A DNA stretch of 64,000 bases, from IMG/VR virus record IMGVR_UViG_3300028666_000022, positions 1 to 64,000 of that record; one strand, written 5' to 3'. Made by a program: the position numbers and the translations under genes. Under the pieces are notes generated by a model. That model searched no databases and was not told where the DNA came from. It saw nothing but the letters and a program-made list of their open reading frames with translations. This document shows, piece by piece, positions 33,482 through 60,228 of the stretch (its first letter is position 1; each line of letters begins with the position of its first letter).

Positions 33482-33553
33482 GAAAATTTAATAAAAAACT
33501 ATTATTTTTAAAGAGGTTATTTATTGACCTCTTTTTATTTTACTATTTTTCAT

Positions 33554-34759: not shown

Positions 34760-34829
34760 TTCATAATATTGGTTTATTGGTTTGGTTTAAAAATCCCTTG
34801 ATTATAGAAATATATTTCAGGGGATTTTT
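34760..34829 (+). ncRNA. Anti-leader element plus terminator, copy 1
   Basis: TTCATAATATTGGTTTATTGGTTTGGTTT followed by an AATCCC/GGGATT hairpin and U-tract. Confidence 0.55.
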
Positions 34830-34941
34830 ATTTATAATGATTTTAAATTAAAACTTTATTAAAAATAAACCCTAATAAATTTTTTTATTCTAGGGTTTTG
34901 ATCTATCTTTGATACCATAAACCAATAAACAAATAATAATT

Positions 34942-35751
34942 ATGAAAACAATTGAAACATACTTACCAATATTTCCGGGGTTTTATGAAACAATGTTTGA
35001 ACCCTATGAAGATAATGAGATCGATCATTTCAATGACTTAAGGATTGAAAACAAATTAACTCCAGTTACTTATGATCAATTTAAGTTTGATTATGAAGAG
35101 TATGAAAACTCAATAGGTAAACAATGTTGTGTATTTATTGAAAATCAATTAAGTTCTTACATAAGTGAAATTAAATTTCAATCAATTTGCTCACCAAGAG
35201 AATATAACTTCGCAAACGATTCAATTAACTGTGAAGTTCTTTTGTCTGATGAGAACATTTTATCAATCAAAAACTTTATAGAATCTCATTCAAAGGAATT
35301 CGAAACATACATAAAAGATAACTATAGTTCTTATGATGGTTTCTTTTCTCATTATTCTAATAATCCTAATGAATGGATTAACGAACTTGATAAGGCATTA
35401 GAACATAAACACCAATTAGGTAGTATTCTAAATTTCATTTGCTTGTGCTTAGATGTTAACGAAAGTGATATGTTTGAAGCTTGTAGCGATATTTATTTTC
35501 AACCTGAAAATAGTGAAGATTTAGAGTATAATGAATTTTGCCCGGTTTGTAAAGAGTTTGTTTCTGTAAATAGTTTTGCTGGTAATTGCTGTACAACTTG
35601 CAGGGATGAAAAAATATCTAATTTCGAGTTGTTCTTATGTTCTAAGTGTAAAGACGAGATAACCAATGTACAAGAAAAAAGACATTTAACATATCAATTA
35701 TTACACGGGCTAACATTGTACAGTGAAATACTATGCAATAAATGTCAATAA
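34942..35751 (+). CDS. Early acidic phage protein with a C-terminal Cys cluster
   Basis: FPGFYET, SPREYNF, SYDGFFS, several CxxC motifs; early cassette upstream. Confidence 0.6.
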   Translation: MKTIETYLPIFPGFYETMFEPYEDNEIDHFNDLRIENKLTPVTYDQFKFDYEEYENSIGKQCCVFIENQLSSYISEIKFQSICSPREYNFANDSINCEVLLSDENILSIKNFIESHSKEFETYIKDNYSSYDGFFSHYSNNPNEWINELDKALEHKHQLGSILNFICLCLDVNESDMFEACSDIYFQPENSEDLEYNEFCPVCKEFVSVNSFAGNCCTTCRDEKISNFELFLCSKCKDEITNVQEKRHLTYQLLHGLTLYSEILCNKCQ

Positions 35752-36354
35752 GATTATTGTAACCTTATTCAATTAATTACGTATAAGAAATATAAACCAA
35801 TAAAAACAAAATATTATGAGCAGTGATACTAAATTTTATACTCCGGTAAAACCTTCATTTAATGAAATAATGATCGTTTTAAAATTAGAATTCGAGAATG
35901 TAATGATAATTGACGATAACAAAAAAGATGAATTTCGCTTTTTTCGTGTTATGTTAACTTACCAAGGTGAAGAGAGAATGATGTGGGTTTTCTTTGATTC
36001 ACCTGATTTTGATAAAGAAAAACCTCATACATGCTTTGATTTAGGTGCATATAGTAATAGTGTTGAGATTATGCAAACCATTGCAAAGTATTTCGGCGGC
36101 TGGTTAATCGAAAATGATTGTAATGATAATATTAAACCTTATTACATTGAAAACAATTGTTCAATTGATAAGAAAAATTCAGATTATCTTTATGAAGCAC
36201 TTGCAAAAGAATTCAGCTATAAAGATGTTGAAAAACTCTGTAAGTTTATTCAGGAAAACAAAAAGCTTATTACCGATCTTAATTTTGGTTTAAAATAAAA
36301 TACTATAATAGATTGATTTTTTAAAGAGGTTCTAATAGACCTCTTTTTTATTTA

Positions 36355-36422
36355 AAAATAAGTGTTAAAAAATTTGGTTTTAAACCTTTCTTGACTTATC
36401 TTTGTTTGTATAAACCAATAAA
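36355..36422 (+). repeat. 68-nt promoter/leader repeat, copy 2
   Basis: Identical to 33554-33621. Confidence 0.85.
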
Positions 36423-38390
36423 AACAAAATGATAATAATTGCAAACATAAGATATGCTGATGAACCAAGCGAATTGATTCCATTAACTAAAATGAATATT
36501 AAATTTGTTAAAAGATATGGCGATACAAAAATAGGTTATTATTCTCTTAATTATAATGATGTTAATAATTTTGGATATGCTTCATTAGGTAAAGAATTAC
36601 CCGAAAGTTATTTCTTAAATAAGAAAGTAAAATATATTAATTCAAAATACATTAAATAAGTGTTAAATAATTTGGAATACATAAACTTTTGTTATATCTT
36701 TGATAGCATAAACCAATAAACAAATAAGATTATGAAAACTAAAGTAAATAATACCAGAAAAGAAATTACCTACAACAAAATAGTTAATTTTGAAAACAAT
36801 GAAATTACTGTCTTAGATGGTGTATTCAATTATGGTGACATACATAATGAAGGTAAAGTTTTTAAGGGTGCAACGGGTTCAAAATTTGAGGTTGTTTCAA
36901 AAAAACAGTATTGTAATACAATGCAAAAAAAGAACGTAATTGATAAATTGGAGGATCTTGAAATTCCTGAACATTTTGGCAAGGGTAAAAGTGCTTTAAA
37001 TAAATGTTATTTAGCAATGAAAGTAAATAATGAGATTGAAGATTTTATGTTTGATCTTAGTTATTTTGAATTGTGGGATTATTTAAGAGAAGAACTTAAT
37101 TTAAGTTTAGATCAGGCATATATTTTTAATTGTATTGGTGGTGGTCGTTGTTTTGAAAAAGATTTTCAGGGCAATATTAACCCTGAATTATCAGAAGTAA
37201 TAAGAGAATACGAAAGCTAATAATTAATGTACTTTTTGCCCTGCTCTGAAATAAAAGCAGGGTTTAGTTAGTAGAAACCAAAAGATATGATGTTATGAAA
37301 AATATTATAATTGATAACTACCTAAAAGCTAAATCAGTGTTTAATAAGGCTGATGAAGATTTACACAAATATTTCAAAAAGAAACATGAGAAAAGTATTA
37401 ATGATGCAACCTCATTAGAAGAACTTAATCAAATAAAAGAACAATTGAGAATTATGCCAGAGAGTGTGGGAAAAGTTCTTTTGTTTAGAGAAATTATAAT
37501 TAAAGAAGAAAATATTAAACAATCTTTGTAACAAACAATGTCCAATGTACGTATAGTATATATAAATCAATAAACAAATAATGTCATGAGCTATAGAATA
37601 ACTAAAAAAGATATTGAAAGACAAGTTAATATTTTAGCTGAACTTTCAAATACAAAGAAAACCGAAGATTGTAAGCAATACCTTGCTATTGATTATGCAC
37701 CTGTTTATGGTGGTTATCGTTTGGTAATGGTAGGAAGTGAAAACGGTGCACATTACGGTGCATTTAATCAATCTTCATGCTGTAGTAGAATGAGTGCAAA
37801 AGAATTTAGTTTTTATCTTAGTGGTTTAATTTCTGGTATTGAATCAGTAAAGAAAAATAGTGTTATAGGAAATTTATAATTAAGTTTCCTTCTTAAACAT
37901 TTTATTTTTATTATACATTTTTAAACCAAAACAATTATGAACCAGTCAATAAAATACTTTGAAGTCTTTAGAAGTAAATTTGATAAGAAAAATAATATTG
38001 CTTCTATCAATACTATTGCTATTTTCACAGATACTTTTAAAAGAATTAGTGATAACTATACACAATGTTCATTTAAAAATTATGGGTATGAGTGCTTAAT
38101 GCCAATGGCTATGAAAAAATATGTAGCTATTAAGGCAGTAACAGCACAATTCATAAATGATTGTTGTAAAGAGATAACAGTTGATAAGGTAGATCAAATA
38201 TTAATACAGGAAGTTAACAAAAGATAAAACGATCAATGTACATATTAATAACTGAGATTATGAAAATATAAATATTAATTTTTCATAAGGGATTTTTTAT
38301 AATTTTTTATAAAAAAGATTCTAAAGAAATAGAAAAGAGAAAAAAGTTTTGTGTGTAAGCCCCCAAAAAGTAATAATATTTACAAATAAT

Positions 38391-38492
38391 ATGAAAAACA
38401 AAGAACTAAGATCAAAACTAAATTTAGAACTAAATTCAGAACTATATTCAGAACTAAGATCAGAACTAGATTCAGAACTAACTTCAATATAA
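38391..38492 (+). CDS. SELx-repeat micro-protein (33 aa)
   Basis: MKNKELRSKLNLELNSELYSELRSELDSELTSI*, built from 12-nt TCAGAACTANNN units. Confidence 0.6.
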   Translation: MKNKELRSKLNLELNSELYSELRSELDSELTSI

Positions 38493-38669
38493 GAATTAAT
38501 AAATTATCCCATACTACCAACAATATTTAATATTAATTATTGTTACAAACTCAGTATTAATGCTATTTATTGAAAGGTTCATTAACAGTATGTTTTACAT
38601 ATTTTTATATAGTTAAAGTACAATTAAAACATAATTAACTTGGTTAAAATCAAATTTAGAAAAAGCATT

Positions 38670-38855
38670 ATGAAAAACAAAGAACTATATTCAGAACTAA
38701 ATTCAGAACTATATTCAGAACTAAGATCAGAACTAGATTCAGAACTATATTCAGAACTAAATTTAGAACTAAGATCAAAACTATATTCAGAACTATATTC
38801 AGAACTAAATTCAGAACTAGATTCAGAACTAAATTCAGAACTATCTTCAATATAA
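38670..38855 (+). CDS. SELx-repeat micro-protein (61 aa); 12-nt tandem repeat
   Basis: MKNKELY(SELx)n..SSI*. Shares its start (ATGAAAAACAAAGAACTA) and 3' flank (CTTCAATATAAGAATTAATAAATTA) with 38391-38492. Confidence 0.7.
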   Translation: MKNKELYSELNSELYSELRSELDSELYSELNLELRSKLYSELYSELNSELDSELNSELSSI

Positions 38856-38933
38856 GAATTAATAAATTAACCTTCCTGTAACAAAAGATATTTATTCTCG
38901 TATAGTATTTTATAAACCAAAAATAAAACTATT

Positions 38934-39392
38934 ATGACACCAGAAGAAATAATAAACGGGAATATATTAATAGCTGAATTTTTAAATTGGGACACCTGCG
39001 AATATATTCAAAGAATAACTAACTCAAAACATCCTTTATATAAGATTAAAAAAGAACCAATAACAGTTTTTTGTTTACCAATTGATCACCCTATTGTTAA
39101 CGATATCTATACAGATAGACCCGGATTTAGTTGGAATTATGACAAAGAAGATGAAAACGGGAATACTATAATAAGATTAATATTCTTTAATGAAGATTTA
39201 ATTTTTCACTCTTCATGGAATTGGTTAATACCAGTTATTGATAAAATTACCTCAACAAATGATTATTTTGATTTTAAAGATAAAACAACTAGCATTGTAG
39301 ATGAAGGAGGTATTTTTATTAATTACAGGTTTATTGAAAACACATTTGAGCAAGTAATAGAGTTTATTAAGTATTATAATAGTATTCAATAA
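38934..39392 (+). CDS. Conserved hypothetical phage protein
   Basis: NILIAEFL...FHSSWNWLIPVIDKI...V.EFIK.YN pattern, recalled from Bacteroidota phages. Confidence 0.6.
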   Translation: MTPEEIINGNILIAEFLNWDTCEYIQRITNSKHPLYKIKKEPITVFCLPIDHPIVNDIYTDRPGFSWNYDKEDENGNTIIRLIFFNEDLIFHSSWNWLIPVIDKITSTNDYFDFKDKTTSIVDEGGIFINYRFIENTFEQVIEFIKYYNSIQ

Positions 39393-39481
39393 TATTATTT
39401 TAAAAATAAGTGTTAAAAAATTAGGTTTTAAACTTTTCTTGTTATATATTTGTACTCATAAACCAATAAATAAAAAACATT

Positions 39482-40063
39482 ATGGAAACCAATACAAATT
39501 TATTAAAAGCATTAGCCTTAATGCAATTCTTAGGTAATAATTATATTCTAATTAATGATACTGAAGATCCTGATCTTTTTCAGGCTTTTGAAGGTAATGA
39601 AATAGAAGAAAGAGATAAATATATTTTATATTGTTTCGAAAAAAATCTTACTGAAGAAGATTTTACCTTTCTTGAGTTCTGTAATGAAAACCTTACCGAA
39701 GTAGAAGGAATTGAAGGCGATGAAGAAAGAGAGAATTATATGGTTTTAACTGATGAAGAAGCTCAAGAAAAAGTAACCGAATATATAAAAGAATCTATTT
39801 GGGCTTTTAATGCTGATTTTATTATCGGTGAATGTGAATTGGATTTTTCAGGTGAAAAAAGTTTACAAAAAATGCAAAGTGATTCTTGTGAAAATTGTAA
39901 CGATTTTTTACTATCATTAGTTGAAAAAACCTGTGGTATTGAGACATTTGTTGACGATGCAATAAGATCAGATGGTAGAGGCCATTTTATGAGTTCTTAT
40001 GATAGTAATGAAAATGAAGAAACTGTAGAAGGTGAAACATTTTATATTTATAGAATAAATTAA
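39482..40063 (+). CDS. Acidic early phage protein
   Basis: YMVLTDEEA, WAFNADFI, DGRGHFMSSYD..E, YIYRIN; early cassette upstream. Confidence 0.6.
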   Translation: METNTNLLKALALMQFLGNNYILINDTEDPDLFQAFEGNEIEERDKYILYCFEKNLTEEDFTFLEFCNENLTEVEGIEGDEERENYMVLTDEEAQEKVTEYIKESIWAFNADFIIGECELDFSGEKSLQKMQSDSCENCNDFLLSLVEKTCGIETFVDDAIRSDGRGHFMSSYDSNENEETVEGETFYIYRIN

Positions 40064-41404
40064 GTTTTCCTGCTTAAACTTAATAAAACACCTTAGATAA
40101 TTGTAACATTGTTTAAGGTGTTTACGTATAATGTACAAACCAAAATAATATGATTATGGAAACCAATAATATTAAATATGCTTTAACATTAAGAGAAATA
40201 TCTAACGATGCTTTTGTACGTATACCAATAAGAGAAATTAATAATTGGTATGTGGGTAATATTAATCCACTAACATTTTATAAGAATGTACTAAAGGAAT
40301 TTTTTAAAAAAGAATTAGAACCGATAAAAGAATCTAATTATTATAATTCAACTATTGATATATTAATTGCTAACGAAGTGAATATTTATAGTGATTTTTT
40401 TGGTTATTACAATAGTAGATTAATATATAAAAATGAATTTTTGTTTTTAAATCCAGAACCTTATAATGGTTCTCAGTCAGATTTTATGCTAAAATATGAT
40501 GAAACATTATTATCTTATTTGTAACAATATTCTAATTTAATACGTATAATATCAATGTACATAACTAATATTGTAATTATGGAACCGAAATATATTGCAC
40601 AGGGTTTAGCTGAAACTTGGAAGAAAGAAAAATTAAAAGATAGTGAAAATAATAAAGTAGCTCCTTTAATGAGATTTTTAGAATTTAATTATAATGAGAG
40701 ATATGTTGCTCTTTGTTATAGATTAAATATTACTCCTGTTTCTTTAGGTAAATGGTTAAGGAAAGAAATTAAAGATGTAGTTTAAATACAATGTACAAAT
40801 AGTTTAATTTAAAACATACTGAAATGAAAAAGGGTTATGTAATTTACAAAATTTTTGATAAGACATATTTTTTTGGTGCTAATCCTAAACCGATCTTTTC
40901 TTCTGATAATTGGATTATATTTGATACAGAAGAACAAGCAATAAACAGATTAAAAGAAGAGTATGAACTATTTGAAACATATTTTGAAGGACAATATTTA
41001 ATTATTATTCCTATTATATATTTTGAATATTAGATCAATGTACATAACTAATACAATAATATCATGTATAACTATAAAGAAGAAAGAGAAAAGATATTTA
41101 CAGAACAAGGTCAAAAATTGTTTATTAAAATAAGAGATAAATCTAAGGAATTATTATATATTTCTGGTGCTTTTAGATTAGATAAAGTAATTGAAGGTTG
41201 TTTGGGTAATAGTTGGGTTATGCTTGCTTGTATTGATTATTTAGTCGAAACAAAAGAAATTATAGAAGTAAATAAAGATCAGGAAATAGCTGCACAACAC
41301 AGAGTTTTTGTTAAAGGATAAATAAAACGTTTTCTATTGTAACAATATCCATTAAACATACGTATAATTAAAATAATAATATTAAATATAATAAATTTTA
41401 AAAT

Positions 41405-42379
41405 ATGAGACACATTAATAACCTTAAAAAAATTAACGATTTTCTTTTATCCTTAGATATTCCTTTTAGAAATGAAGGAAATATTTTTTATTTAAACGAA
41501 GACAAATTTCAAATTCGTTATGTAGATTCAGAAAATCATAAAATGGATTATGAGAAAAGATTTGGCATTAAAGGCATTCCACATAATTACTTTATTAACA
41601 TAACAAAAAAGAATAAAGAATTAGGCATTAGAACGATGTGGATCAAAGATTGGGAATTAGAGGAAACTAAAACAATTACTAGTATAGAAGGAAATGTATT
41701 GACTGATTATAACCGTAAATGGAATGTTTTACAGTCATATATTAAAACTGCAACGGGTAAAATTAATAACCGTGTCTTTGCCAGAGATTGTGAAATAAAA
41801 CAAATAACAAATAAAGAACTTAGACCGTTTTTAGATGAAAATTGTTTCTACGGTTATAGAAGTTCTAATATTAATTTGGGTTTATATCTTAAGAAAGATA
41901 AGAATAATGTTAAAGCTGGTACATTATTAATGTGCTATACATTTGGACACCCTTTCTTTGGAAAGGGTTTGTACGATGTTGAAATAATTAGGGTAGCTAC
42001 AAAACTAAATCACCAAGTAATTGGCGGTGCAAGTAAATTATTAACTAATTTCTTAAAAAATTATCCGGTTTTGAATATAGCTGGTAAAGAAGTTAATGTT
42101 AATAAAATAGTTTTTATAGTCGATGCTGATCACAATGATGCTAAATCTTTAGATACTTTAGGTTTTACTTTTGTCAGTCATTCTGGTAATGGTTTTATGA
42201 ATGTTGAGGCAGCAACAGGAAAAGTATTTCATCGTCAACCAATGCACCATAAACTTATCATGGAAAGAATGGCAAAGGGTGAAGTTTATAGCGTTGCTAA
42301 TGCTGGCTCAATTATTTATACAATAGATAAAAATGAGTATTTGAAAAAACTTGATAATAAAACAGAGGTTGAAAACTAA
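41405..42379 (+). CDS. Hef-like / GNAT-fold (Mom-like) phage protein
   Basis: FARDCEIKQI..FLDENCFYG..LGLY..YTFG..EIIRVATKLNHQVIGGASKLL..D..LGF; ECF-type promoter upstream. Confidence 0.6.
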   Translation: MRHINNLKKINDFLLSLDIPFRNEGNIFYLNEDKFQIRYVDSENHKMDYEKRFGIKGIPHNYFINITKKNKELGIRTMWIKDWELEETKTITSIEGNVLTDYNRKWNVLQSYIKTATGKINNRVFARDCEIKQITNKELRPFLDENCFYGYRSSNINLGLYLKKDKNNVKAGTLLMCYTFGHPFFGKGLYDVEIIRVATKLNHQVIGGASKLLTNFLKNYPVLNIAGKEVNVNKIVFIVDADHNDAKSLDTLGFTFVSHSGNGFMNVEAATGKVFHRQPMHHKLIMERMAKGEVYSVANAGSIIYTIDKNEYLKKLDNKTEVEN

Positions 42380-42642
42380 TTTGTAAAATAGAGAAATTTT
42401 ATAAATATCTATTCTTACAATGTCCACTTAAGATCGTATAATGTACAAACAACTTAATAAAAACAATTATGAATTACACTGAAATAGAAATTGAAACCAT
42501 TAAAGCTAATGCCTTTGATAAGGGCTGGAGATATGGTTTATTTACTGGTTTAACAATTGTATTAATATGTTTTATTGTTGCGTGTATTTTAATATAACAT
42601 TATTGTAACAATGTCCATAAAATATACGTATATTATAACATA

Positions 42643-42777
42643 GTTCATTCAAATGAATTAAGACTGGAGTTTAAGAGACTCTAATAAAGGATAAGCCAAC
42701 TAAAATAAAAATGGCTAAAGATAAAATGTCTTTCGAGAAGAAGAGAGGAAGCAGTCAATAAATTTGTTTGAATGAAC
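42643..42777 (+). ncRNA. Candidate multibranch ncRNA
   Basis: 11-bp closing stem GTTCATTCAAA/TTTGAATGAAC; internal GACTG/CAGTC, GAGT/ACTC, AGCCA/TGGCT, AAAGATA/TGTCTTT; begins right after the ECF-type promoter at 42604. Confidence 0.5.
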
Positions 42778-44715
42778 GAATAATTAAAATATGTATTAGT
42801 ATAAATCAAACCAAAATTATTATGTATACAAAAGGAAATTGGACAATAGACGGTTCACAAATAGTATCTGTAGAAAACCATAAAGAAATGGATCAATCAA
42901 ACGAAACTATTTGCGATTTTAATCCCGAAACAGAATATCCAACAGTACACGAAAGAAGTGTAAAAGAATCTTTTGAAAATGCTAAACTTATTTGTAAAGC
43001 TCCACAAATGTATGAAGCTATCAAAGAAGTATTAGATCTATTCGATGGTAATGGTGTTCCAAATATCGAATGGATTAAAAATCGACTTACTGAAAGTATA
43101 TCTTAAAATAAATTAAATCTTATGCGAAGACATAAATTATTATCTGAAATATTTGAACATGCTAAAGTTATTGGAGCAAATACAAATACATTAGCTTTTT
43201 TAATAGCAACAATGACAGATAAAGCACTTACAAAATTTCATAAAGAATTTATGAAAAAACAACCATATAAAGAAAATAACAAATAATCTAATCTTATGTC
43301 AAGATTCATCCTTAGAAACCAAGATAAAATATCAAAAGCTTTAGGTAAGGATTATGTTAAGCTTTTATTAGATAGCCTTAAGGATCATTTTAATTCTAAT
43401 AAGGAAATAGAAGAACATACATATGAGAATCTAAAGTATAAGATAATACACATACAGAATGTACAAAAGAATACTGATTCAATATTTGAGTTTGCAATAG
43501 TAAAGAAAACATTCGATGTTTATACTCTTGCTTATTATTCTTGTATGAGTTAAAAACCTAAAATAAATAATATCATGACTGTAGATGAATTTATAATAGT
43601 ATTACAAAATCTGAATCCTGCTTTAAGAGCAAAGGAAATTGTAATAACTGCACCAAATGGATTACAGTTTGAACCAAAAGTAAAACAACAACTAATTGAA
43701 CCCTATAATATTTTTGGTGGTATTGAAAACGTTAAAAGCATGGTAATAACTTATGAATAAATGTTTATTAACAATGTACATAATTAATACCATAAGAAAA
43801 TGAAATATAATTCAATTGTATTATTAAAAAATAATGAACCAGTTAAACTATTTGATAACTGGTTCAATGCAGGTAAATGGACTGATGAGAATATTAAATC
43901 AGAACATACTTTATATTCATTTAAAAAACTTAATTATTTTAAATCATTATTATACAAATTAGAAATATGGTTATGAATAAAATAAACTTTTCCATGAGTA
44001 GAATGTACAATTATTTTATTTTTTCGAAAACACTAGATAAAATAAAATCAACACTAAGAAGAGATTTAGATTCAAAACTAGAATCAGATCTATTTACTGA
44101 ATTATACTTAAAACTAGATTCAGAATTAGAAGTAGAATTCTATGATGAACTAGATTCAGATATAGCAAGATCTATTTACAAAATTATTTAAATAAAACCA
44201 AATGAAAAATATTTTATTAAAAATTGGCGATACTGTAGAATTATATAATGGAACTAAAGGTACTGTTAGTGCTTTGAACTTAGAAACATATGAAATTGAA
44301 ATATCTAATCCAAATTCATATCCACAATGGTTTCATAAAATGAATATTAAAACCTTAAATAGTAAAGAAGTACTAGCTCAAGATTTAATAATTGAACCTT
44401 ATTTTTTGTAACATTTCAATCTTATCTCACGTATAATATAAAAACAATACTATATGAAAACAATAATTGTAATTTCAATAATTTATCTTATTAGTTTTGT
44501 CGGTGCTTATTTCTTTATTAAAAAAGCATATTCTAAAAATGGTAAATGGTTTGATCTTAATCCAGATTTTGTTGATTTTTTAATTGTTATTTTACCTTTA
44601 AGTAATACAATATTAGGTTTTATGTTTATCTTTGGTGTTTGGAGAAAAGATAGAAAGAAATATGATCATAACCTATCTAAATTCTTTGGAGTTAAAAAAT
44701 TATAATGATATTTAC

Positions 44716-44783
44716 TTTTTTCATAATTGTTTGTTTGGTTTGTTTAACTCCCCTTCGGTTATTGGTTTACCTAGGGGAGTTTT
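44716..44783 (+). ncRNA. Anti-leader element plus terminator, copy 2
   Basis: TTTTTTCATAATTGTTTGTTTGGTTT plus an AACTCCCCT/AGGGGAGTT stem with TATTGGTTT in the loop. Confidence 0.55.
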
Positions 44784-45361
44784 ACTGTTTTAAAAAGATT
44801 TGATGAGATGGTAAATATTGAATACAATAAAAATTTTAACCTTAATTTTATTTTCAATGTCATTGATAATTTATATTTTACTTTAGTTGATTTAGTGCAG
44901 CAAGAAGGTAGAATGATATTTGCTTCTGAATTAGATGAGATAATATAATAACATGTCTTATGAAGAATAAAATATTAGTTGATGCTTTACATCAAAAAGG
45001 AAATTATCTTAATATGGAAAATATTAATTTAAATGTAGATTTAAAAATGAGTTTTGGTGAAGATTTAGAGACATTTCACAGAGAATTTGATGTGGCATTA
45101 TTAATTTCATTATATAATAATTAAATAATTTTATGAAAAATATAATTATTGATATTCTACTAAAAAGAGAACTATGTAAGATGAAAAGTATTATTAATTC
45201 TGTTCGAATGAATGATGATAACATAGAGGATTATTTAAATACTAATTTATATTTAATATTGAAAGCAAACTTAATATTTGAAATAAATAATGACTTTGGT
45301 ATTAATTTAGATACAGAACTAAGTTCTGATATAGATACTGAGTTTTTAAACTAATTGCTAA

Positions 45362-45712
45362 ATGAAAAAGTTTATAATAGACATATACAATAATAAGTTT
45401 CAGTTATATTTGGGTTTTACTTTGGTATCTGAGTCTGGTTTTAGTATTGAGCAACCAGATGAATTTTTTAATGAAAAATATTTTACACTATATGAATTAA
45501 AGACATTAGAGGAATTTCAGAGACAAGGATTTGCAAAATATTTATTATATCAGATATTTGATTATGTAAAGAATGAACTTAGGATTAATATTATTACATT
45601 AATTGTTTATAAAAATAATCATAGTGCAGTAAATTTATATTTAGATAGTGGATTTGAAATATATAATGACTATGATGATTCATATTCACTAATAAAAACT
45701 TTTGTCTTATGA
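45362..45712 (+). CDS. GNAT-family N-acetyltransferase
   Basis: EEFQRQGFAKYLL acetyl-CoA loop; LIVYKNNHSAVNLYLDSGF. Confidence 0.88.
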   Translation: MKKFIIDIYNNKFQLYLGFTLVSESGFSIEQPDEFFNEKYFTLYELKTLEEFQRQGFAKYLLYQIFDYVKNELRINIITLIVYKNNHSAVNLYLDSGFEIYNDYDDSYSLIKTFVL

Positions 45713-51272: not shown

Positions 51273-52304
51273 ATGAAAACATTAGAAGATTTAACGCCCG
51301 AAATTAAGGCAAAAATTCCTATGTACAAAGAAAGATGTACTAAAGATCTATATTCCGGCGTGGAATATGATAATTTTAATCCTGAACAAAGTACTGCTTA
51401 TGTAGATAAGTTGTATGAGATATGTGGATTTGAAAAACCAGTTGTAATCTTTGCTGATGATCCAAATGATTACAAAAAGAAGTTAAAAGAACTTGAAAAA
51501 GGTAAGAAACTTCAGAAGGTATATGAACAGTATCTTAAGAAGAATAACTTGGAAAACGATGGTACAGTATTCGAAAATTGCAAATATGAGAATAAGTCTC
51601 ATTGGCTTTTCTTGTGTTCATCTTATCATAGAGTGTACCTAATGTGGTACAAGTTTATTCAAGATGAATTTCAAATAGATCATAAGAATAAAGATATTCT
51701 TAATTGGTTGTATGAAAATGCCAATAACAATATCGCTCGTTGTTTCTTTACAAAGATGTTTGTTCTTGTTCTTAGAATGCCTAAATACATTCATAGAAAT
51801 GCAATAGGTTTCCACAGTATAGATGGTGGTGCAATACATTGGCCTAATTATAATATGTATTACATTAATGGTCGTAGAATACCTGAAGATTTGTTCTTAA
51901 AAACAATCAATAAGGAACTTACTTTCGATGAGTTTATTAAGTTAACTGATGAAAATGTTAAGGGTTCATTGATAACTCTTATGAAAGAAAAGTTCGGAAA
52001 TGAATACTTAATGGCATTTCTTAATGCCAAAGTAATTGATGAACAAACTATTAATCATAGTAGTGGTTATAGTGAAGTAGTTAAACTTTGGCACACCAAT
52101 GAGAAATTTAGTTTTCTTGTTGATATTAACGGTGTTGAAAATCAACCTTATTCTTGGTTGGAACTTCATTGCCCCTCAACTGGTTCGATGTTTTTAATTG
52201 ATACCAGTGCTCACTTTGATAATGCAATAGAAGCTTGTAAGTATCATAGACCTCAACAAATTCCTGCTGAATTGAAATATGATTTCAATGAGTTTAACAA
52301 CTAA
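51273..52304 (+). CDS. DUF6745-like protein lacking the usual internal tetrapeptide repeat
   Basis: LTPEIKAKIP.Y.E N-terminus, FEKPVVIFADDP, WYKFI, GFHSIDGGAIHWPNYNMYYINGRRIP, CPSTG..FLI; own TATATTTG promoter at 51223. Family assignment is from recalled motifs. Confidence 0.7.
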   Translation: MKTLEDLTPEIKAKIPMYKERCTKDLYSGVEYDNFNPEQSTAYVDKLYEICGFEKPVVIFADDPNDYKKKLKELEKGKKLQKVYEQYLKKNNLENDGTVFENCKYENKSHWLFLCSSYHRVYLMWYKFIQDEFQIDHKNKDILNWLYENANNNIARCFFTKMFVLVLRMPKYIHRNAIGFHSIDGGAIHWPNYNMYYINGRRIPEDLFLKTINKELTFDEFIKLTDENVKGSLITLMKEKFGNEYLMAFLNAKVIDEQTINHSSGYSEVVKLWHTNEKFSFLVDINGVENQPYSWLELHCPSTGSMFLIDTSAHFDNAIEACKYHRPQQIPAELKYDFNEFNN

Positions 52305-52316
52305 AAAGGTGTTTGA

Positions 52317-52362
52317 AAATAAGGAATTGGATAATGATCTTAAGTTATCCAATTCCTTATTT
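52317..52362 (+). terminator. 18-bp perfect hairpin after the DUF6745-like gene
   Basis: AAATAAGGAATTGGATAA-N10-TTATCCAATTCCTTATTT, overlapping the micro-ORF at 52309. Confidence 0.65.
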
Positions 52363-54598
52363 GATAATTTAAGACTAATGGATGATTTTAATATGTTGAA
52401 TTATGAAGAGCATATTGAATTGGGTAGTGAATTATGTTCCGATATATAATTTCAATGAATTTAACAACTAAAATGAAATTTGAGAATATAGAACTGGATT
52501 ATACTCTTCTGGAATTATCCTCCAGTTCTATGCTCATTGATTTAACTGATACATTTTCTTCAGATTTAGAATTTAGATTATTAACTAAAACAATTATAAT
52601 GTCAAACAGTGAAGAGTTTGTTGAATTAGCCGATAATTTATTTAATGAATTAAAATAATATTATTATGTTTGATAATAAAGAAATAGATAACAGTTTATT
52701 TATTAATATGTTTTCATTTGAAAATGAATTAAGATATAATAAAATATCTAATGATTTAGATAATGTAATAAAAGAATTTGTTTTAAATAGTTTAAGAATT
52801 GAAATGTCTGTTGTATTAGGTTTAGTGTTTTATCTTGAAATAATTAATAATTAAATTCATAATATGAAAAATAATGAAATTGCTAATGAACTAGATATTC
52901 CAATATCTAATATAATCTCTCTAAAGATATGTAAAGAAAACAATAGATTTAGTGCCAATATATCATACAGCAAAATATTTGATTTAATGAATGATGAAAT
53001 ATTTATAGATTTACGTAATGCAATTTATTCTAATATAAGACATGAATAATAAATGAAAAATAATATACTAATAGAAAATGAATTTATTGCTCTAAATAAC
53101 ATGGGTGATAATTTTATTAATGATTTAATAAGTGGATTAAATTTTCATGATGCATTAACTGAGCTACGGTTAATGATAAGAGTTAATGATTTAGAAGAAA
53201 TATTTTTTAAAGATTTTGATTTTTTTAATTAAAAATATAATATAAATAATGAAATTTCAGAATATTGAAATTGTTGATATGTTTTTTAAAAAATCAAATA
53301 TGTTCTTTCAAGATTTAAAATACTCAATTTTAGATCTTAAGTTAGATGGAGAATTATTTGATAAAATTATATTTGAGGGAGATACAACATTATTGAACGA
53401 AATTGCTAATGATTTAGAAGATGAATTAAAATGATTACTGAAACTAAGAACGATATTGAATTAAGAAAAATAAAACTATTGATTGAATCATTATATAATG
53501 ATTTATATATTAATATTCATATTGATTTAATGTTTAAAACCACCGATGAATTATTTGATGGATCATTAGGTGGATTAGAAAATGATATTGATAATGAATT
53601 AAAACAATGAATAATAGTGATATTGCATTAGATTATATGTTATCAAAAAATAATTTTATTTTTAATAATGATTTTAATGTTAAATTAGATATGACACTAC
53701 AACATCAATTAATAAATCAACTTAGAATTAGATTATTTAGTGATTTATTAAATGAAGTTTACGATGAAACAGAAATAATAACCATATGAAAAATTATGAA
53801 ATAAGTAAAATATTATCTTTTAAATTAGAATTTATTTCTGATATAACAGATAGATTTAATTATCATACTCATAAAAATATATATTTAGATTCTCTTGAAT
53901 TAATTGAACTTTTATTAGATGATTTAAATAGTGAGTTACAATTAGATTTAAAATAATAGAATGAAAAATGTTACTCTTGAAGATTTGGATGAAAAAATAA
54001 TATTTCTTGATAATGATTTCGGATTATTTATGATTGAAATTTGCTCATATGGTTTAAATGATTATTTATATAGAGAATTTAATGAACTATTTGCAGATTT
54101 ATTTATAGAGATTAATAACGAAATTCAAATAAATAATTAAATTCATATTATGAAAAATATTGAAATTGCAAACCGAAGGCAAAATATTAAAGCAATTATT
54201 AATTTGGAAGATAAATTACACGATTTTTTATATTCTTTCTTTAATGAAAATGATGAAATAAATATTGATTTACTCAATGAATTAGATCCAATCTTAAAAA
54301 ATAATTTACGAGAAGAGTTATTTAGTTTAAATATTGAAATCTTTATAATAATATAATATTGATTATGAAAAACATTGAAATGCTTTTAGATTTAGAGTTA
54401 AAATTAGATCCTAATTCAGGTACTATATTATTTTTAGAATTAAGATCAGCAGTAAATTCAAAATTATTTAATTTATTCCCTTTTACAGAACAAGAATTAA
54501 TACTATATTTAGATATTGATATTTAATTAAAATTTTTCTTGCGTATTTAAAAATAATAGTATATATTTGCTACATAAAAACAATTTAAAATTAAAAGT

Positions 54599-54970
54599 AT
54601 GAAAATTCTAAAACAAGTAGGTCATCAAGGTGACACACAATGGTTTGCAATAGATGCAGTACCAGAAAATGCTAAGTTGTGTAAGAAACAATTTATTGCA
54701 GCAAGTGAAAAATCAGGCAACGTACATGCTCTTAGTGGAAATTACGATATGTACGAGTATGAGGACGGATTCGTAATTGATGTGAAAGATGATTGCGCAA
54801 TGCTTAATCATACAGCAATATCAGAACTTAACGAAAAAACTTGGAATAATCCTCAAGTACTTCCTCCACGTGATCATAGAAGTTCTGAGATTAAGAAGGG
54901 TGTTTATTTTGTAGGCATTCAAAGAAGGTTTAATCCTTTGAGTAAGCTTATGGAGAAAGTTAAGGATTAA
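54599..54970 (+). CDS. QGD/His-motif beta-rich protein, recalled as the usual DUF6745 partner
   Basis: HQGD, ASEKSGNVHAL, LNH..DH, GVYFVGIQRRF..KVKD; own TATATTTG promoter at 54562. Confidence 0.65.
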   Translation: MKILKQVGHQGDTQWFAIDAVPENAKLCKKQFIAASEKSGNVHALSGNYDMYEYEDGFVIDVKDDCAMLNHTAISELNEKTWNNPQVLPPRDHRSSEIKKGVYFVGIQRRFNPLSKLMEKVKD

Positions 54971-57175
54971 GAATAACAAAAATTAAAAATTTAAAAGCTA
55001 TAATGGTAATTATATCATAATTATTGTTATGGCTTTTGTTATTAAAAATGTAGGTATGAAATTTGAAAACTATATAGCAATTGATCAATTAGATAATATT
55101 TTATTTGATTATTTTAAAATATCGAAAGAAACCACATATAGTTTAGATAGATTTATTAATACTGAATTATTAATGGAGCTAAGAAATGAATTAGAAGATC
55201 AATTAGAAATTGAAACATATGAAAAATATTGTATTATTTGAAGAATTAAATTCTAAGCTTATTATTGATGATGAATTAACTACATTAAATAATAAACTAA
55301 AATTTAATTTAAAACAAGCAATTAACCATCAAATTTTTGATGAATCATATTATTCATTAAGAAAAGAAATTATTAATGAATAAGAATAACATGAAAAATA
55401 CTATATTAAATAATAATTTGGATTATTCTTTAGATGGAGAATTACCAACAATATTAGTTGAAAATATTCACAATATATTAATGTTCGATGTTTTAATTAT
55501 TGATTTAGATATATTATTTTAATATGAAAAATATTGAAGCAGGAAATGTTATTACAGAAAATTCAATTTTTATTAATTTAATATTAATATCTTCTGATTT
55601 ATATAATACTTCGTGGAATGAACTAGATATAAAATTAATTAAATCAACTAGTTCTGATGATGAATTTAGAGGTGATCACATGAAAGAATTAAATGATGAA
55701 ATATCAGAAGAATTATAATAATATGAAAAATACAATATCTGTTGATGCATTAGATTATGTATTAACAAAAAAATATTTTGATGATATTTTATCTCAAAAA
55801 TTATCAATAAAATTATTTGGAGAAATTAATGAAAAATTATATGTTGAATTATTTACTGAACTAAATTTGGGTTTAGATCCAACAATTGGTTCAATTTTAG
55901 AAATATGATTATTGTAACAAAATGCATTTATTATTCGTATATCAAAAGATAAAAATATAAAACTATGAAAAATATTGAAATGGATCGGTGTGACATCATA
56001 GGAATTGAATTTCTATTAATGTCAACATTAAAAAATAATATATTTATTAATAGTAAGAATGCTTTATATTATGAAACAAAAAAAATTTTTATTTCTAACT
56101 TTAATGAAGATTTGGATATTATTCTTCGTGATGAATTACATAATAATCTGTAACAAAATCATTCTTTTATTCGTATTATAAACCAAATTTAAAACACAAA
56201 TTTTATGAAAAAACAAGGCATTTATATTGAGAAACATTCAAAAACACAAACCAAGAAGTTATATAATAATGGTTATCTCACAATAAGATATTTGTTTCAG
56301 CCACATTCAATTAATTTCAAAAATGAAATGATTAATGATGACAATCAACATTTTTGTGGTGGATATAGTGTTAATAATATGGATTTATCTAACGATGCAC
56401 TTCTTAATCGAGTATTAGTCGGTAAGAAACCAATGGGTGTTATTTATGAAAGAGATGATGAAAAATTATATAATTATTTTAAAAATATTGACATAACTAA
56501 ATTTTTTGTTGAAGTATGTAAAAATACAATAACAAATTATAATTATATCATTGTTGCTTACAAAGGTAATTTTGATGATCTTTTTGATTTAGAAACATTA
56601 AAATCTGATTACAAAAATAGTGGAATTGATATAGATTTAAATGAAGTCAAAGGAAAAACACTCAAAGATTTTTTTGAAACTTGGGATGACAATCTTTGGA
56701 TTACTGGATTAATGTTAGGATATCCAATTGAAAATACTATTTCAATTTATAAAGATGGTGTGAGATGAAAACATTAAAAGTTAAATTTAAATATAGGTTA
56801 TTGGGACAATATTTTCCAATGATAACACAAGAATTAGTTAATGTTGAAAGTGATTCTAATGAAGAAGAAATGCAACAACAAATTAATTTTGCATATAAGG
56901 AATTTATTAAATATATTGGTAATAATGTTGTTGAAATATATCCATACGAAATTCTTTAAAATAAAAATTATCATGAGAAACTACGATAGGGATTGGTTTG
57001 AAAAATATGATGAACCGGGAAATAAAATTCTCAATCTAATTGGATTTGATGAAAATGATATTGAAATTTGTCATGAATATTTATGTGACAAAGATGATTG
57101 TAATTGTTCTGGACATTGGAAGGTTGGTAATGATAAAAATGTTCACACTTGGATTGGTCGACCTGTTTAAAAATA

Positions 57176-57233
57176 TTTTCATAATTATTTGGTTTAAATC
57201 CTTTGAAGCAATAAAATGTTTCAAAGGATTTTT
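57176..57233 (+). ncRNA. Anti-leader element plus terminator, copy 3
   Basis: TTTTCATAATTATTTGGTTT plus an AAATCCTTTGAA/TTCAAAGGATTT hairpin. Confidence 0.5.
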
Positions 57234-57512
57234 GTTTTATGTAACAAATTTATTTATTTTTCGTATAATTTATTTTTAACTAACAAAACTAAAATTATAC
57301 GATATGTTAATCACTAAACTAGATTTAATCGAAGGCATAATAAACATGACCTTTGCTGATTCAATACCTAAGAGAAAGTATAATAAAATGATATTGAGAC
57401 TTTCAAAAGAAAGTAATTTTCTTTTAGCTGAGTCATATTATAAATCGACTGGTAAAAGATTAAGGCCAATCATGCATGACATTTTTATTGATGAATGATT
57501 TTTTATTATGTT

Positions 57513-57541
57513 TGTAACAAACCAAATTATTTTTCGTATAT
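57513..57541 (+). promoter_or_regulatory. Representative ECF-type promoter TGTAAC-N16/17-CGTAT
   Basis: TGTAACAAACCAAATTATTTTTCGTATAT, identical at 58391; more than 20 copies in the window. Confidence 0.8.
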
Positions 57542-60161
57542 TTGTTTAATCAAAACAATATTATCATGAAAAAATTACAAAAAATAATAACAATAGATAC
57601 AGATAAAACATACCCAGAAACTTGTCTAATAAAGAAAGGTGATAAATATCATTATTGTTTAGCTGGTGGTGAGTTTAGAAGATTAGTTGCAAATGGTTGG
57701 CAACCTCAAGAATTAATATTAATATCTAATGAAGAAATAAAAGAAGGTGATTTAGTATTATATGAAATGAATAGTATTGAATATGCAACTATTGATTATA
57801 TTGAAGCAAATTCTTATAATGGTAAAATAATTGCAGCATATCCTCAAATTGAAAATCTTCCTTTATTTTCAAAGGAATTTCTTCAAGAATGGTGCAATAA
57901 TCCAGTTGAAAAGATTGGAGTACAATATGATGAGATAAGTACCAAAGTAAATAGAAATGGATTGTTAATTAGGTATATATTAAATTTAACATCAAATAAT
58001 GAAGTAATTTGTAATCTACCTCAAGATTTTAAAAGTGTTAAACTTCTTAAAGAATATTTAGAAGAAACGCCAAAAGAAGAATTAACTAAACATTGGAATG
58101 ATATTAATAAAACAAGATTATATAGTGAAGACGATTTACTTTCTTTAGCTAATTATATTAGTGATAGTAACACTTTTCATTATACCATTAAATCATTAGT
58201 TGAAAACTGGAAAAATCAAAAATGAATATATCAATAAATGATTCAAACAATAATTTCTTTAGAATTTTTGAGATTAAATTTTAAAATATTCTTTGGAATA
58301 ACTTAGACAATAATTTAATTTATTTAGATAATGATGAAAATGTTGATGTTGAAATTGCTATTTCAAGGGAATTAGAATTTTAAAGTATTTTGTAACAAAC
58401 CAAATTATTTTTCGTATATTATATCATAAAACAATTAAAAATTAAATATTATGCAATTTACTGTTACAACCATTAGGCTAAACTCTAACACAAAAGAGTT
58501 TCAGAACACAGAAACAAATAATTTCTTGTTGTGTGAAGAAGTAGTAAAAGAACTAGAACGTATCAATTGTGATGATGAACAATTTGAAAAGTTCTTTTCT
58601 ATGAAAAGAGGTGAAAACATAACAATTGAAACTGTTGATGAAGATGAGAATAAATTGAGGTTTTGTTATATTTTTAGAGTTAGTTGATAAAAAGAAAAAA
58701 CACAAATAATAAAATCATGATACTTGAAAAGAAATTAACAATCGAAGAACAAAATGAGATATTAGGTAATCTTTTTGGATTCCAATTAAAGGATTACGAA
58801 AACGATGGACGTTTTATTTTGTATGATGAAGAAGGACTTGAGTTTTACGGAAAAGATTCGAATTTAAAATATGATTTTTCAACCCTTTCGGGAATATTTC
58901 ATTATGTTAATCAAATTGGCATAGAAAGAGGTGAATATAATAAACAACTAGAAATAAAAAGAGCATTGGGTTTGTAACAATTAGAATTTGTTTACGTATA
59001 ATATTGTAAATTAAACCAAAAACATTATGAAAACAACTGAAAACGAATTTAAAACCAATATTGAAACTTCGATTCAAAAAGAAATTAATGAAGCATCTCG
59101 AATTTTTGGTTATGAAAAGAAATTGATTATAAAAACAGCTAAAGAAATAGTTAAAGAAAATAATCAAGAATTAGAAGCTATTCATATTAGTTTAGCTATT
59201 ACTAAATTAGAAAAACAAAGAAGTGACATTCAATTAAAAATAAAAGAAAATATAAAACGAGTTGAGAGTATTCCTTATGAAACTCATTTAAAAAATTATG
59301 AGAATGCAATATCTGAATTAACTAAAGAAACAACTGTTGAAGGATTAAACAAATTATATTCTGAAATAGTCAATAAGCAAGAATTTATTGATATACCAGT
59401 TAATTTACAAATTGATTTAGCTGATGAAACAGATGAACTAGAACAAAAATTAATTAATCCGACAAAAGAAAGATATTATACTCTGTTTGATGAAACTGGC
59501 TACATTGTTAGAGATTCTCACGATAATAATAAAATTGTTTTCAAAGGTAAACATGTAAATGGTAATGACGCTAAGAAATGGGCCTACGAACATAATAATA
59601 AAATCGTTTAAATCATGAATAAATTATTTAAAGCAAAGAATAAGAATAATAATTTTCAGTGGGTAATTGCTGAAAATGAAGAACAAGCATATGAAATTTG
59701 CATTAAATCTAAATTTGTAAAAAATATTAATAATTATACATTATATTTAGGTGATAAAGACACTCCTAATTTTTATGAGTATTTTAAAAATAAAAAAAAT
59801 GATATGACTGAAGTAGATAATAAAATTGGTGTTGGTTGTGTTTATATTAATAATGTTTCTTCGGTTTGGAAAGTAATGTGTGTTTAAATTTTAAAAAAAT
59901 AACATGAAAGACGATAACGGTAACACAATTAAAATTAAATCATACACATTGTATTGGCTTAATGGCAAACGTCAAGTAATTAAAGGTTTTGATTTTGTTA
60001 ATGCCTTTACTTTAGCTGGTTACAAACAAAAAGATTTATCTTCGGTTGATTTTACTAAAATGGGAAACTGTAATAAATATGTTTGGAACAAGAAAATAAT
60101 TAAGTGGGAATTAACCGAAAGGGCGAGAATGTATGAACACTTCAAACAAAGTATATAAACG

Positions 60162-60228
60162 TTTTTCATAATTGTTTTGTTTTGGTTTAACTCCCCTTTG
60201 TTTATTGGTTTACAAAGGGGAGTTTTTT
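60162..60228 (+). ncRNA. Anti-leader element plus terminator, copy 4
   Basis: TTTTTCATAATTGTTTTGTTTTGGTTT plus an AACTCCCCTTTGT/ACAAAGGGGAGTT stem with loop TTATTGGTTT. Confidence 0.55.

What the first reader, a model, noticed from the sequence alone, without database searches (positions are those of the whole stretch)
34760..60228. Four 3'-UTR hairpin elements antisense to the conserved phage leader and start codon
Seen: at 34760, 44716, 57176 and 60162, directly after stop codons, the pattern TTCATAAT...TTGGTTT is followed by a terminator hairpin. Two hairpins (44746, 60189) share the stem AACTCCCCT/AGGGGAGTT and display TATTGGTTT in the loop. These sequences are reverse complements of the leader AAACCAATAAA...ATTATGAA found before many early and middle genes (e.g. 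32945, 33633, 34942, 35816, 36732, 39482, 48751). The minus-strand ATGs open only short frames antisense to real genes. Inference: 3'-UTR-derived sRNAs or kissing loops that repress translation of a whole gene class, acting as a temporal shut-off switch.
Basis: partly seen in the sequence, partly recalled or inferred. Interest (0 to 1): 0.7.

Follow-up and report, generated by a model that had tools for sequence, protein, structure and literature searches.

The report
Inverted leader copies before phage terminators
A 340-kb phage of a probable Bacteroidota host carries four non-coding, back-to-front copies of its own mRNA leader and start codon just before transcription terminators; two of them should fold back onto the next gene's start site in read-through RNA and silence it, a known phage device in a new setting.

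Summary
Four orphan reverse-complement copies of the leader and start codon (TTCATAAT...TTGGTTT) lie 8-16 nt after + strand stop codons and directly abut strong hairpins with U tails. They are not minus-strand genes: the frames are 9, 10, 33 and 49 codons, and no promoter precedes them.

The leader is the 5' end of mRNAs made from two promoter classes: a Bacteroidota sigma-A type, and a phage type, TGTAAC-N15-19-CGTATAAT. Start regions lack Shine-Dalgarno motifs.

At 34760 and 60165 the best partner is the start region of the next gene. Read-through RNA is predicted to form a 25-27 bp helix over the terminator and the next promoter, burying the AUG. RNA started at the gene's own promoter stays open. 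This is the logic of T4 genes e, soc, 49 and I-TevI.

The elements at 44720 and 57178 have no such partner.

Five related jumbo phages share the promoter and leader and have analogous, non-homologous inverted leaders at terminators. A family-wide test of cis pairing was not significant. No RNA data exist, so every function is inferred.

Verdict: a real feature, and a new variant of a known kind.

The parts
34760..34788 (+). S1 inverted leader plus anti-start codon. It has three overlapping TTGGTTT repeats and forms the 5' arm of the long-range helix.
34789..34829 (+). S1 terminator hairpin with U tail
   Evidence: -20.9 kcal/mol
34904..34911 (+). TATCTTTG, a Bacteroidota-type -7 promoter element for gene 34942. 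It lies inside the loop of the S1 long-range helix.
   Evidence: consensus TAnnTTTG from PMC6847099
34914..34946 (+). Leader and start codon of gene 34942-35751, the 3' arm that pairs with S1
   Evidence: -22 kcal/mol, rank 1 of 192
44720..44741 (+). S2 inverted leader plus anti-start codon, with no strong cis partner
   Evidence: rank 35 of 197
44746..44781 (+). S2 terminator hairpin. The loop at 44759-44769 shows TTATTGGTTTA, the complement of the leader's 5' end.
57178..57195 (+). S3 inverted leader plus anti-start codon, with no cis partner downstream
   Evidence: rank 119 of 200
57196..57231 (+). S3 terminator hairpin (15 pairs) with U tail
60158..60188 (+). S4 inverted leader plus anti-start codon. 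Positions 60158-60182 form the 5' arm of a 25-bp helix.
60189..60224 (+). S4 terminator hairpin. The loop at 60202-60211 shows TTATTGGTTT.
60240..60269 (+). Phage-type promoter (TGTAAC-N-CGTATTAT) of gene 60302, inside the loop of the S4 long-range helix
60288..60313 (+). Leader, AUG and first four codons of gene 60302-60478, the 3' arm that pairs with S4
   Evidence: -27.7 kcal/mol, rank 1 of 197
33611..33637 (+). Example of the sense leader (AAACCAATAAAC...ATTATGAA) behind a host-type promoter. Similar leaders lie at 32945, 34942, 35816, 36429, 36732, 39482 and 48751.
32241..32264 (-). True leader of the minus-strand gene 31883-32245, with its own phage-type promoter. It is not an orphan element.

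Best explanation
The four elements are short RNA-level anti-start-site modules. Each is an inverted copy of the phage's own 5' leader and AUG, placed in the 3' UTR directly in front of an intrinsic terminator.

At S1 and S4, the module and the start region of the next gene form the two arms of an inverted repeat. This repeat brackets a composite terminator-promoter. RNA that reads through the terminator folds into a 25-27 bp helix that buries the next gene's AUG and its A-rich leader. The gene's own promoter lies inside the loop, so its transcripts begin after the 5' arm and stay open. The next gene is therefore translated only from its own promoter.

S2 and S3 are further copies of the same two module types, and they have no cis partner. 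I take them to be modules carried along when regulatory cassettes were shuffled. They remain free to pair in trans.

- Shown: sequence, position, non-coding status, complementarity and predicted folds.
- Inferred: the transcription start sites, read-through, and any effect on translation.
For: **The leader is the 5' end of transcripts**
- It begins 0-10 nt (typically 6-7) after CGTATAAT of the phage-type promoter, and about 5 nt after TAnnTTTG of the host-type promoter (PMC6847099).
- None of 96 start regions has a Shine-Dalgarno core, and 56% have A at -3. Translation should therefore depend on an open, A-rich start region (PMC6847099).

**Predicted folds**
- Read-through RNA at S4: -45.9 kcal/mol, z -6.6. 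A 25-bp helix joins 60158-60182 to 60288-60313 and includes the AUG.
- Read-through RNA at S1: -50.9 kcal/mol, z -5.2. The helix joins 34760-34786 to 34914-34946.
- The same starts, in RNA begun at the predicted start sites, fold at only -3.6 and -3.0 kcal/mol.

**Specificity**
- The duplex between each start region and its own upstream sequence is -27.7 and -22.0 kcal/mol at these two sites. It is -4 to -15 at 20 other intergenic gaps.
- The adjacent gene ranks 1 of 197 and 1 of 192 among start regions.
- S4 matches 60302 through its first four codons.

**Relatives**
- The same layout (anti-start, terminator, promoter, start), with lineage-specific sequence, occurs at G004 34048 (-24.9), G005 9203 (-23.4), G004 36561 and G001 36559.

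**Strain variants**
- Eight variable sites lie between or outside the paired S1 arms and none lie within them (p about 0.08).

**Precedent**
- T4 genes e, soc, 49 and I-TevI work this way (PMC3014915).
Against: - S2 and S3 have no strong downstream partner (ranks 35 and 119), so the cis model explains only half of the sites.
- An unbiased test in six genomes found no general excess of pairing between a start region and its own upstream sequence: 6 observed against 4.1 expected at -18 kcal/mol or better, with own ranks near uniform.
- The S1 and S4 hairpins look like efficient terminators, so read-through may be rare.
- Start sites are inferred from motifs only.
- There are no RNA data.
- The conserved loop motif of S2 and S4 is not explained by this model.
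Confidence: 0.4

Rival explanations
1. Trans-acting riboregulators. After termination, or after processing, the 3' UTR (single-stranded anti-leader plus terminator hairpin) pairs with the leaders and start codons of many early mRNAs and shuts off their translation. The S2 and S4 loops start the pairing by a kissing contact with the leader's 5' end.
For: - The anti-leader is predicted to be unpaired next to a stable hairpin, which is the usual build of a small RNA.
- It pairs at -15 kcal/mol or better with 23-28 of 107 early-region starts for S1, S2 and S4 (3 of 107 for S3), against 18-29 of 551 (S3: 2 of 551) elsewhere and about 3-4 for shuffles.
- All four lie in units driven by the phage-type promoter, while many targets have host-type promoters.
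- The S4 loop is an exact 14-nt complement of the consensus leader 5' end. The loop is identical in S2 and S4, although the upper stem differs.
- This model covers S2 and S3, which have no cis partner.
Against: - No RNA evidence exists at all.
- The class-wide complementarity follows automatically from the element being an inverted leader copy.
- The loop display is one evolutionary event, and terminator loops in five relatives show no such enrichment.
- S1 and S4 match their neighbour better than any other target.
- Loop identity between two copies that are about 90% alike is weak evidence.
Confidence: 0.2
2. Neutral by-products of cassette shuffling. The early region is built from repeated terminator-promoter-leader cassettes. 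Recombination or local inverted duplication between them has left orphan inverted leader fragments with no RNA function.
For: - Regulatory cassettes are clearly repeated: hairpin AAAGAGGTT..ACCTCTTT followed by AAATAAGTGTTAAA and the promoter occurs at 32809, 33510 and 36323. S2 and S4 are a roughly 70-nt module found behind unrelated genes.
- Contigs from other samples cross-map between cassette copies.
- Early genes are barely conserved between relatives, so turnover is fast.
- PeSL cassettes in T4-like phages are a precedent (PMC2839356, PMC4122927).
- The family-wide cis test was negative.
Against: - All four orphans have the same orientation, the same place (8-16 nt after a stop codon) and the same contact with a hairpin (0-5 nt). 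They also keep an intact CAT and TTGGTTT.
- Relatives have non-homologous elements with the same geometry that follow their own leader consensus.
- TTGGTT is three times as frequent as AACCAA in the 14 nt before terminators: 21 against 7 across six genomes.
Confidence: 0.2
3. Pairing of the 5' and 3' UTRs within one transcription unit, as in icaR. The inverted leader at the 3' end pairs with the leader of the first gene of the same mRNA, closing the molecule and limiting its translation or decay.
For: Bases specific to each variant agree with the leader of the element's own unit. S1 and the leader of 34022 share TTAAACCAAACCA, which is unique among 17 leaders. S3 and the leader of 56205 share AAACCAAAT, also unique. 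S4 and the leader of 59027 share TTAAACCAAAA plus ATTATGAAAA.
Against: - By duplex energy the unit's own leader ranks only 5, 74, 8 and 22 of 101.
- The leader of S2's own unit has no AAACCAA.
- The limits of the transcription units are inferred.
Confidence: 0.1
4. DNA-level role. The inverted repeats are either binding sites for a protein that recognises the leader DNA (a roadblock or repressor), or the ends of an invertible promoter segment.
For: - S1 and S4 form inverted repeats that flank 100-130 bp containing a promoter, which is the layout of Bacteroidota invertible promoters (general knowledge).
- The genome encodes two serine recombinases.
Against: - Both recombinases have an N-terminal MerR-type HTH and sit next to TnpB genes, so they are IS607-type transposases and not invertases.
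- There is no tyrosine recombinase.
- No strand-switch joints appear in contigs, even at about 120-fold depth.
- S2 and S3 have no nearby partner arm.
- A DNA-binding site gives no reason to retain the start codon.
Confidence: 0.06
5. They are leaders of real, translated minus-strand small genes.
For: - A perfect leader and an ATG are present.
- S4 opens a 49-codon frame and S3 a 33-codon frame.
Against: - No promoter of either class lies upstream on the minus strand; the hairpin abuts the leader directly.
- Frame lengths are 9, 10, 33 and 49 codons, and all the frames are antisense to + strand genes.
- There are no family matches.
- The hydrophobic composition is what antisense of A-rich codons would give.
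Confidence: 0.02

Closest known systems
T4 genes e, soc, 49 and I-TevI: start-site occlusion in read-through transcripts (PMC3014915)
   Same: - A sequence upstream of the gene's own promoter pairs with its start region in long transcripts.
- Transcripts from the proximal promoter lack the 5' arm and are translated.
- S1 with 34942, and S4 with 60302, have this layout.
   Different: - Here the 5' arm lies in the previous gene's 3' UTR, so the helix spans a whole terminator plus promoter (100-130 nt loop) and is 25-27 bp long.
- The target is a leader without a Shine-Dalgarno sequence, and the 5' arm is a recognisable inverted copy of the leader.
- Two of the four copies have no cis target.
- Nothing has been tested experimentally.
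P1/P7 c4 antisense RNA and 3'-UTR-derived small RNAs such as CpxQ (named from my own knowledge)
   Same: - An antisense sequence is encoded on the same strand as its targets, upstream of them.
- It is displayed in a loop or next to a terminator hairpin, and it covers the ribosome-binding region.
   Different: - No stable RNA species has been shown here.
- No chaperone is known.
- The targets would be a whole class that shares one leader.
icaR 5'-3' UTR pairing in Staphylococcus aureus (PMC3868564) and hbs in B. subtilis (PMC5737220)
   Same: A 3' UTR motif is complementary to the translation start region of an mRNA.
   Different: - icaR uses an anti-SD motif within the same mRNA.
- Here, pairing with the own-unit leader is only moderate, and the best partners are downstream genes.
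PeSL promoter-terminator cassettes of T4-like phages (PMC2839356, PMC4122927)
   Same: - Short composite terminator-promoter modules are repeated at the borders of small, variable early genes.
- S2 and S4 are one module found behind unrelated genes.
   Different: - PeSLs are not described as carrying inverted leader copies.
- Recombination at these modules could not be tested, because no close relative was found.
Lambda sib retroregulation (named from my own knowledge)
   Same: A structure that spans a terminator exists only in read-through RNA and decides the fate of the message. A 25-bp helix would be an RNase III substrate.
   Different: - sib acts on the upstream gene through RNA decay.
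- Here the helix covers the downstream gene's start site.

Membership tests
T4-type read-through start-site occlusion | The 3' arm of the helix covers the start codon and ribosome-binding region of the regulated gene. | tested here: met
   S4: the helix includes the AUG at 60302-04. S1: the helix includes the AUG at 34942-44. Not met for S3. Weak for S2.
T4-type read-through start-site occlusion | The gene's own promoter and start site lie between the arms, so its own transcripts lack the 5' arm. | tested here: inconclusive
   Promoter motifs lie inside the loop, and RNA begun at the predicted start sites is unstructured. The start sites themselves are inferred and not mapped.
T4-type read-through start-site occlusion | Long read-through transcripts exist and are poorly translated. 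| not testable with these tools
   No RNA run was listed for this phage.
Trans-acting antisense or 3'-UTR-derived small RNA | A discrete, stable RNA species is made from the locus. | not testable with these tools
   No RNA data. No Rfam family matches.
Trans-acting antisense or 3'-UTR-derived small RNA | An accessible seed with target complementarity beyond chance. | tested here: met
   The seed is predicted single-stranded. For S1, S2 and S4, 21-26% of early start regions pair at -15 kcal/mol or better, against 3-5% elsewhere and about 3-4 starts for shuffles; S3 reaches this with only 3 of 107.
icaR-like 5'-3' UTR pairing | The 3' UTR motif pairs specifically with the start region of the same mRNA. 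| tested here: inconclusive
   The own-unit leader ranks 5, 74, 8 and 22 of 101 by duplex energy. Variant-specific bases do match for S1 and S3.
PeSL-like mobile regulatory cassettes | Repeated composite terminator-promoter modules flank variable early genes. | tested here: met
   Relatives place terminator hairpins inside promoter spacers.
PeSL-like mobile regulatory cassettes | Insertions, deletions and replacements between close relatives have their ends at the modules. | not testable with these tools
   No close relative was found. Relatives G001-G006 share few early genes.
Invertible promoter (inverton) | A dedicated invertase is present and both orientations occur in the population. | tested here: not met
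   The serine recombinases are IS607-type TnpA proteins next to TnpB. There is no tyrosine recombinase. No strand-switch joints were seen, although contigs drop rare variants.
Protein-coding minus-strand genes | A promoter, an open frame of plausible length, and homologues. | tested here: not met
   No promoter. The frames are 9-49 codons and antisense to + strand genes. No family match.

The most novel reading that the evidence does not exclude
The modules are phage-made 3'-UTR riboregulators. They act in trans on a whole class of early mRNAs that lack a Shine-Dalgarno sequence and share one 5' leader, and so give an RNA-only temporal shut-off in a jumbo phage of Bacteroidota. The loop-displayed anti-leader of S2 and S4 serves as the kissing seed. 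The small KH-domain protein encoded next to S1 may act as a helper.
Probability: 0.15. Interest if true: 0.75.

Novelty: new variant of a known kind. Interest (0 to 1): 0.48.

Why it matters
Bacteroidota and their phages start translation without Shine-Dalgarno pairing, so an open, A-rich leader is the main signal. An inverted copy of that leader is the simplest possible off-switch.

If the cis model holds, these phages keep neighbouring genes insulated from terminator leakage by RNA folding alone. They would have reached the T4 solution independently, but with a helix that spans a whole terminator-promoter unit.

If the trans model holds, it would be a rare case of class-wide RNA control of phage timing.

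In either case the shared promoter and leader define a clade of 300-360 kb phages known only from metagenome assemblies. They also give ready-made parts for gene expression work in Flavobacteria.

Tried and rejected
- **Own-unit specificity.** I expected each element to match the leader of its own transcription unit best. Duplex ranking did not bear this out, although a few variant-specific bases do agree.
- **General cis design.** I tested whether each start region pairs with its own upstream sequence across six genomes. The result was not significant.
- **Inverton idea.** Dropped once the two serine recombinases proved to be IS607 TnpA-TnpB pairs and no inversion joints appeared.
- **Resemblance to Hin/Gin sites.** The resemblance of AAACCAA to Hin/Gin recombination sites is recalled from memory. 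There is no dyad-symmetric site, so I did not pursue it.
- **Close relatives.** Not found. No phage isolates matched. Two protein searches of IMG/VR found nothing. The JGI metagenome search returned only the source contig. A search with the leader 17-mer gave mostly single, chance-level hits and no enrichment of the leader in the two jumbo contigs it found.
- **RNA runs.** None was listed.
- **Covariance model of the four modules.** It recovered only those four in the whole genome (58.8-84.5 bits; the next hit, at 32.7 bits, is the reverse of a real leader). It found nothing significant in five relatives.
- **Rfam.** No family matched.
- **Generic promoter and terminator scan.** Uninformative in this AT-rich DNA.


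Full report
**Context.** The window is the first 64 kb of a complete 339,898-bp virus record. It has 25% G+C and direct terminal repeats, and it was assembled from a rhizosphere metagenome. The left part encodes metabolic genes, including a ribonucleotide reductase with an intein. From about 32.4 kb to 64 kb roughly a hundred small genes run on the + strand, and a short divergent block (29.9-32.3 kb) runs on the minus strand. None of 96 start regions has a Shine-Dalgarno core, against a background of 4.6% of windows. The base at -3 is A in 56% of genes, and the upstream 20 nt are 52% A. That is the Bacteroidota mode of initiation (PMC6847099).

**Observation.** Exact coordinates are in the parts list. 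The pattern AAACCAA-N(0-30)-ATTATGAA occurs ten times in the window, against 0.12 expected. Genome-wide it is confined to 32-60 kb. One of the five minus-strand copies (32241-32264) is the real leader of a minus-strand gene with its own promoter. The other four lie 8-16 nt after + strand stop codons and touch the 5' side of hairpins of -18 to -21 kcal/mol followed by U runs. The minus-strand ATGs open frames of 9, 10, 33 and 49 codons. These frames are antisense to + strand genes, have no promoter of either class and have no family match. Contigs from other samples reproduce S1, S3 and S4.

**What the leader is.** Sense copies lie just downstream of two promoter types.
- Class a is TGTAAC-N15-19-CGTATAAT, with AAACCAA starting typically 6-7 nt (0-10 overall) after it.
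- Class b matches the Bacteroidota sigma-A consensus (TTTG, about 20 nt, then TAnnTTTG) and is preceded by a conserved AAATAAGTGTTAAA box. It stands before 32945, 33633, 34942, 36429, 36732 and 39482.

AAACCAA is therefore the first stretch of the transcript, and the leader runs unstructured to the AUG.

**Module anatomy.** S2 and S4 are copies of one module of about 70 nt, made of the anti-leader and the hairpin. The similarity starts at TTTTTCAT and ends after the stem, and the genes in front of them are unrelated. Their loops are identical, while the upper stem differs, including one compensated pair. The stems of S1 and S3 resemble each other more loosely. A covariance model built from the four finds only those four in the whole genome, and nothing significant in five relatives. 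Rfam has no match.

**Relatives.** Pattern searches of IMG/VR found five other large phage contigs (G001, G003-G006; 102-363 kb). They have many copies of the class a promoter and a leader that begins (A/T)AACCAA(T/A)A about 5 nt after it. Early proteins are barely shared between these genomes. In these genomes terminator hairpins often sit inside the promoter spacer. They also contain orphan inverted leaders that abut terminators and follow their own leader consensus: G001 29967 and 36559, G003 46398, G004 36561 and 34048, and G005 9203 and 311807. Over 827 predicted terminators, TTGGTT occurs 21 times in the 14 nt before the stem, against 7 times for AACCAA.

**Mechanism tests.**
- *Cis, next gene.* Read-through RNA across S4 folds at -45.9 kcal/mol (z -6.6). 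A 25-bp helix joins 60158-60182 to 60288-60313, burying the AUG of 60302 and enclosing the terminator and the 60240 promoter. S1 does the same with 34942. RNA begun at the predicted start sites is open, at -3.6 and -3.0 kcal/mol. The two duplexes (-27.7 and -22.0) are outliers among 22 intergenic gaps. The neighbour ranks first of about 190 start regions. S2 and S3 fail this test, with ranks 35 and 119. The general test across six genomes is negative, although isolated strong composites exist in G004 and G005.
- *Own unit.* Ranks are unremarkable, but S1 and S3 share unique variant bases with the first leader of their own unit.
- *Trans.* The anti-leaders of S1, S2 and S4 are complementary to 21-26% of early-region starts (S3: 3 of 107), against 3-5% (S3: 2 of 551) elsewhere. 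This follows from their being leader copies.
- *DNA level.* The two serine recombinases are IS607 transposases, there is no tyrosine recombinase, and there are no inversion joints.

**Variation.** Two strain variants differ at eight sites between 34802 and 34934. None of these falls in the paired arms of S1 and 34942. The one change in the leader (34934) lies in the predicted internal loop. This is suggestive only (p about 0.08).

**Comparison and verdict.** The closest known device is the occlusion of the T4 e, soc, 49 and I-TevI start sites in read-through RNA (PMC3014915). Module spread resembles that of PeSL cassettes (PMC2839356, PMC4122927). The icaR and hbs UTR pairing (PMC3868564, PMC5737220) and the P1 c4 RNA are looser parallels.

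The feature is real and ordered. Its most likely role is RNA-level masking of start sites. That role is in cis for two sites and unresolved for the other two. I rate it a new variant of a known kind. No function has been demonstrated.

Noticed in passing
window 32300-63000, + strand (for example 34349, 35758, 38877, 48693, 58973, 60240): A phage-specific promoter, TGTAAC-N15-19-CGTATAAT, has 27 + strand and 11 minus-strand copies in the genome. Most lie in the early region. At least five other jumbo phage contigs of 100-360 kb in IMG/VR share it. In those relatives the terminator hairpin often sits inside the promoter spacer.
   Followed up: partly
window 34396-34752 (+): The 118-aa gene directly upstream of S1 has a type II KH RNA-binding domain (PF07650, 27.9 bits, above the cut-off). 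It could be a phage RNA-binding protein linked to leader or anti-leader biology.
   Followed up: no
G000 66106-68058 (-) and 72551-75126 (+); L210 2106-4058 and 8551-11126: There are two IS607-type pairs, each with a TnpA (MerR-type HTH plus resolvase domain) and a TnpB (OrfB_IS605 plus Cas12f-like TNB). In the second pair an M24 metallopeptidase gene lies between TnpA and TnpB.
   Followed up: partly
window 32809-32945, 33510-33633, 36323-36429: A host-type promoter cassette is repeated. It consists of hairpin AAAGAGGTT..ACCTCTTT, then AAATAAGTGTTAAA(A/T)AATTTGG, then TAnnTTTG, then the leader. Before 32945 and 33633, a TTTCATA(T/A) segment upstream of the promoter complements the gene's own start context, with a matching difference at position -2.
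   Followed up: partly
window 57262-57303: The -10 element of the 57240 promoter (CGTATAATTTA) is complementary to the leader just before the AUG of 57304 (TAAATTATACG). Read-through RNA would form a hairpin there that promoter-initiated RNA cannot form.
   Followed up: no
window 33960-34022, 37250-37295, 37880-37937: Sense leaders with AAACCAA follow a hairpin directly, with no recognisable promoter of either class. They may mark processing sites or a third promoter type.
   Followed up: no
window 34022 and 34760; 56181 and 57178: S1 shares the unique variant TTAAACCAAACCA with the leader of 34022. S3 shares the unique variant AAACCAAAT with the leader of 56205. Each of these leaders belongs to the first gene of the element's own putative transcription unit. 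This is unexplained by the cis-downstream model.
   Followed up: partly
window 6085-9855 (+): The ribonucleotide reductase large subunit is interrupted by an intein with a LAGLIDADG domain.
   Followed up: no
window 38640-38855 (+) and G001 20.7-23.1 kb: A 61-aa reading of this ORF matches dozens of overlapping places in a 2.4-kb stretch of relative G001 at 50-68% identity. That points to a long array of short peptide repeats there.
   Followed up: no
window 34800-34935: Strain variants from two other samples differ at 34802, 34824 (insertion), 34852, 34854, 34872, 34873, 34893 and 34934. The change at 34872 together with 34893 would turn a C-G pair of the second hairpin into T-A.
   Followed up: partly
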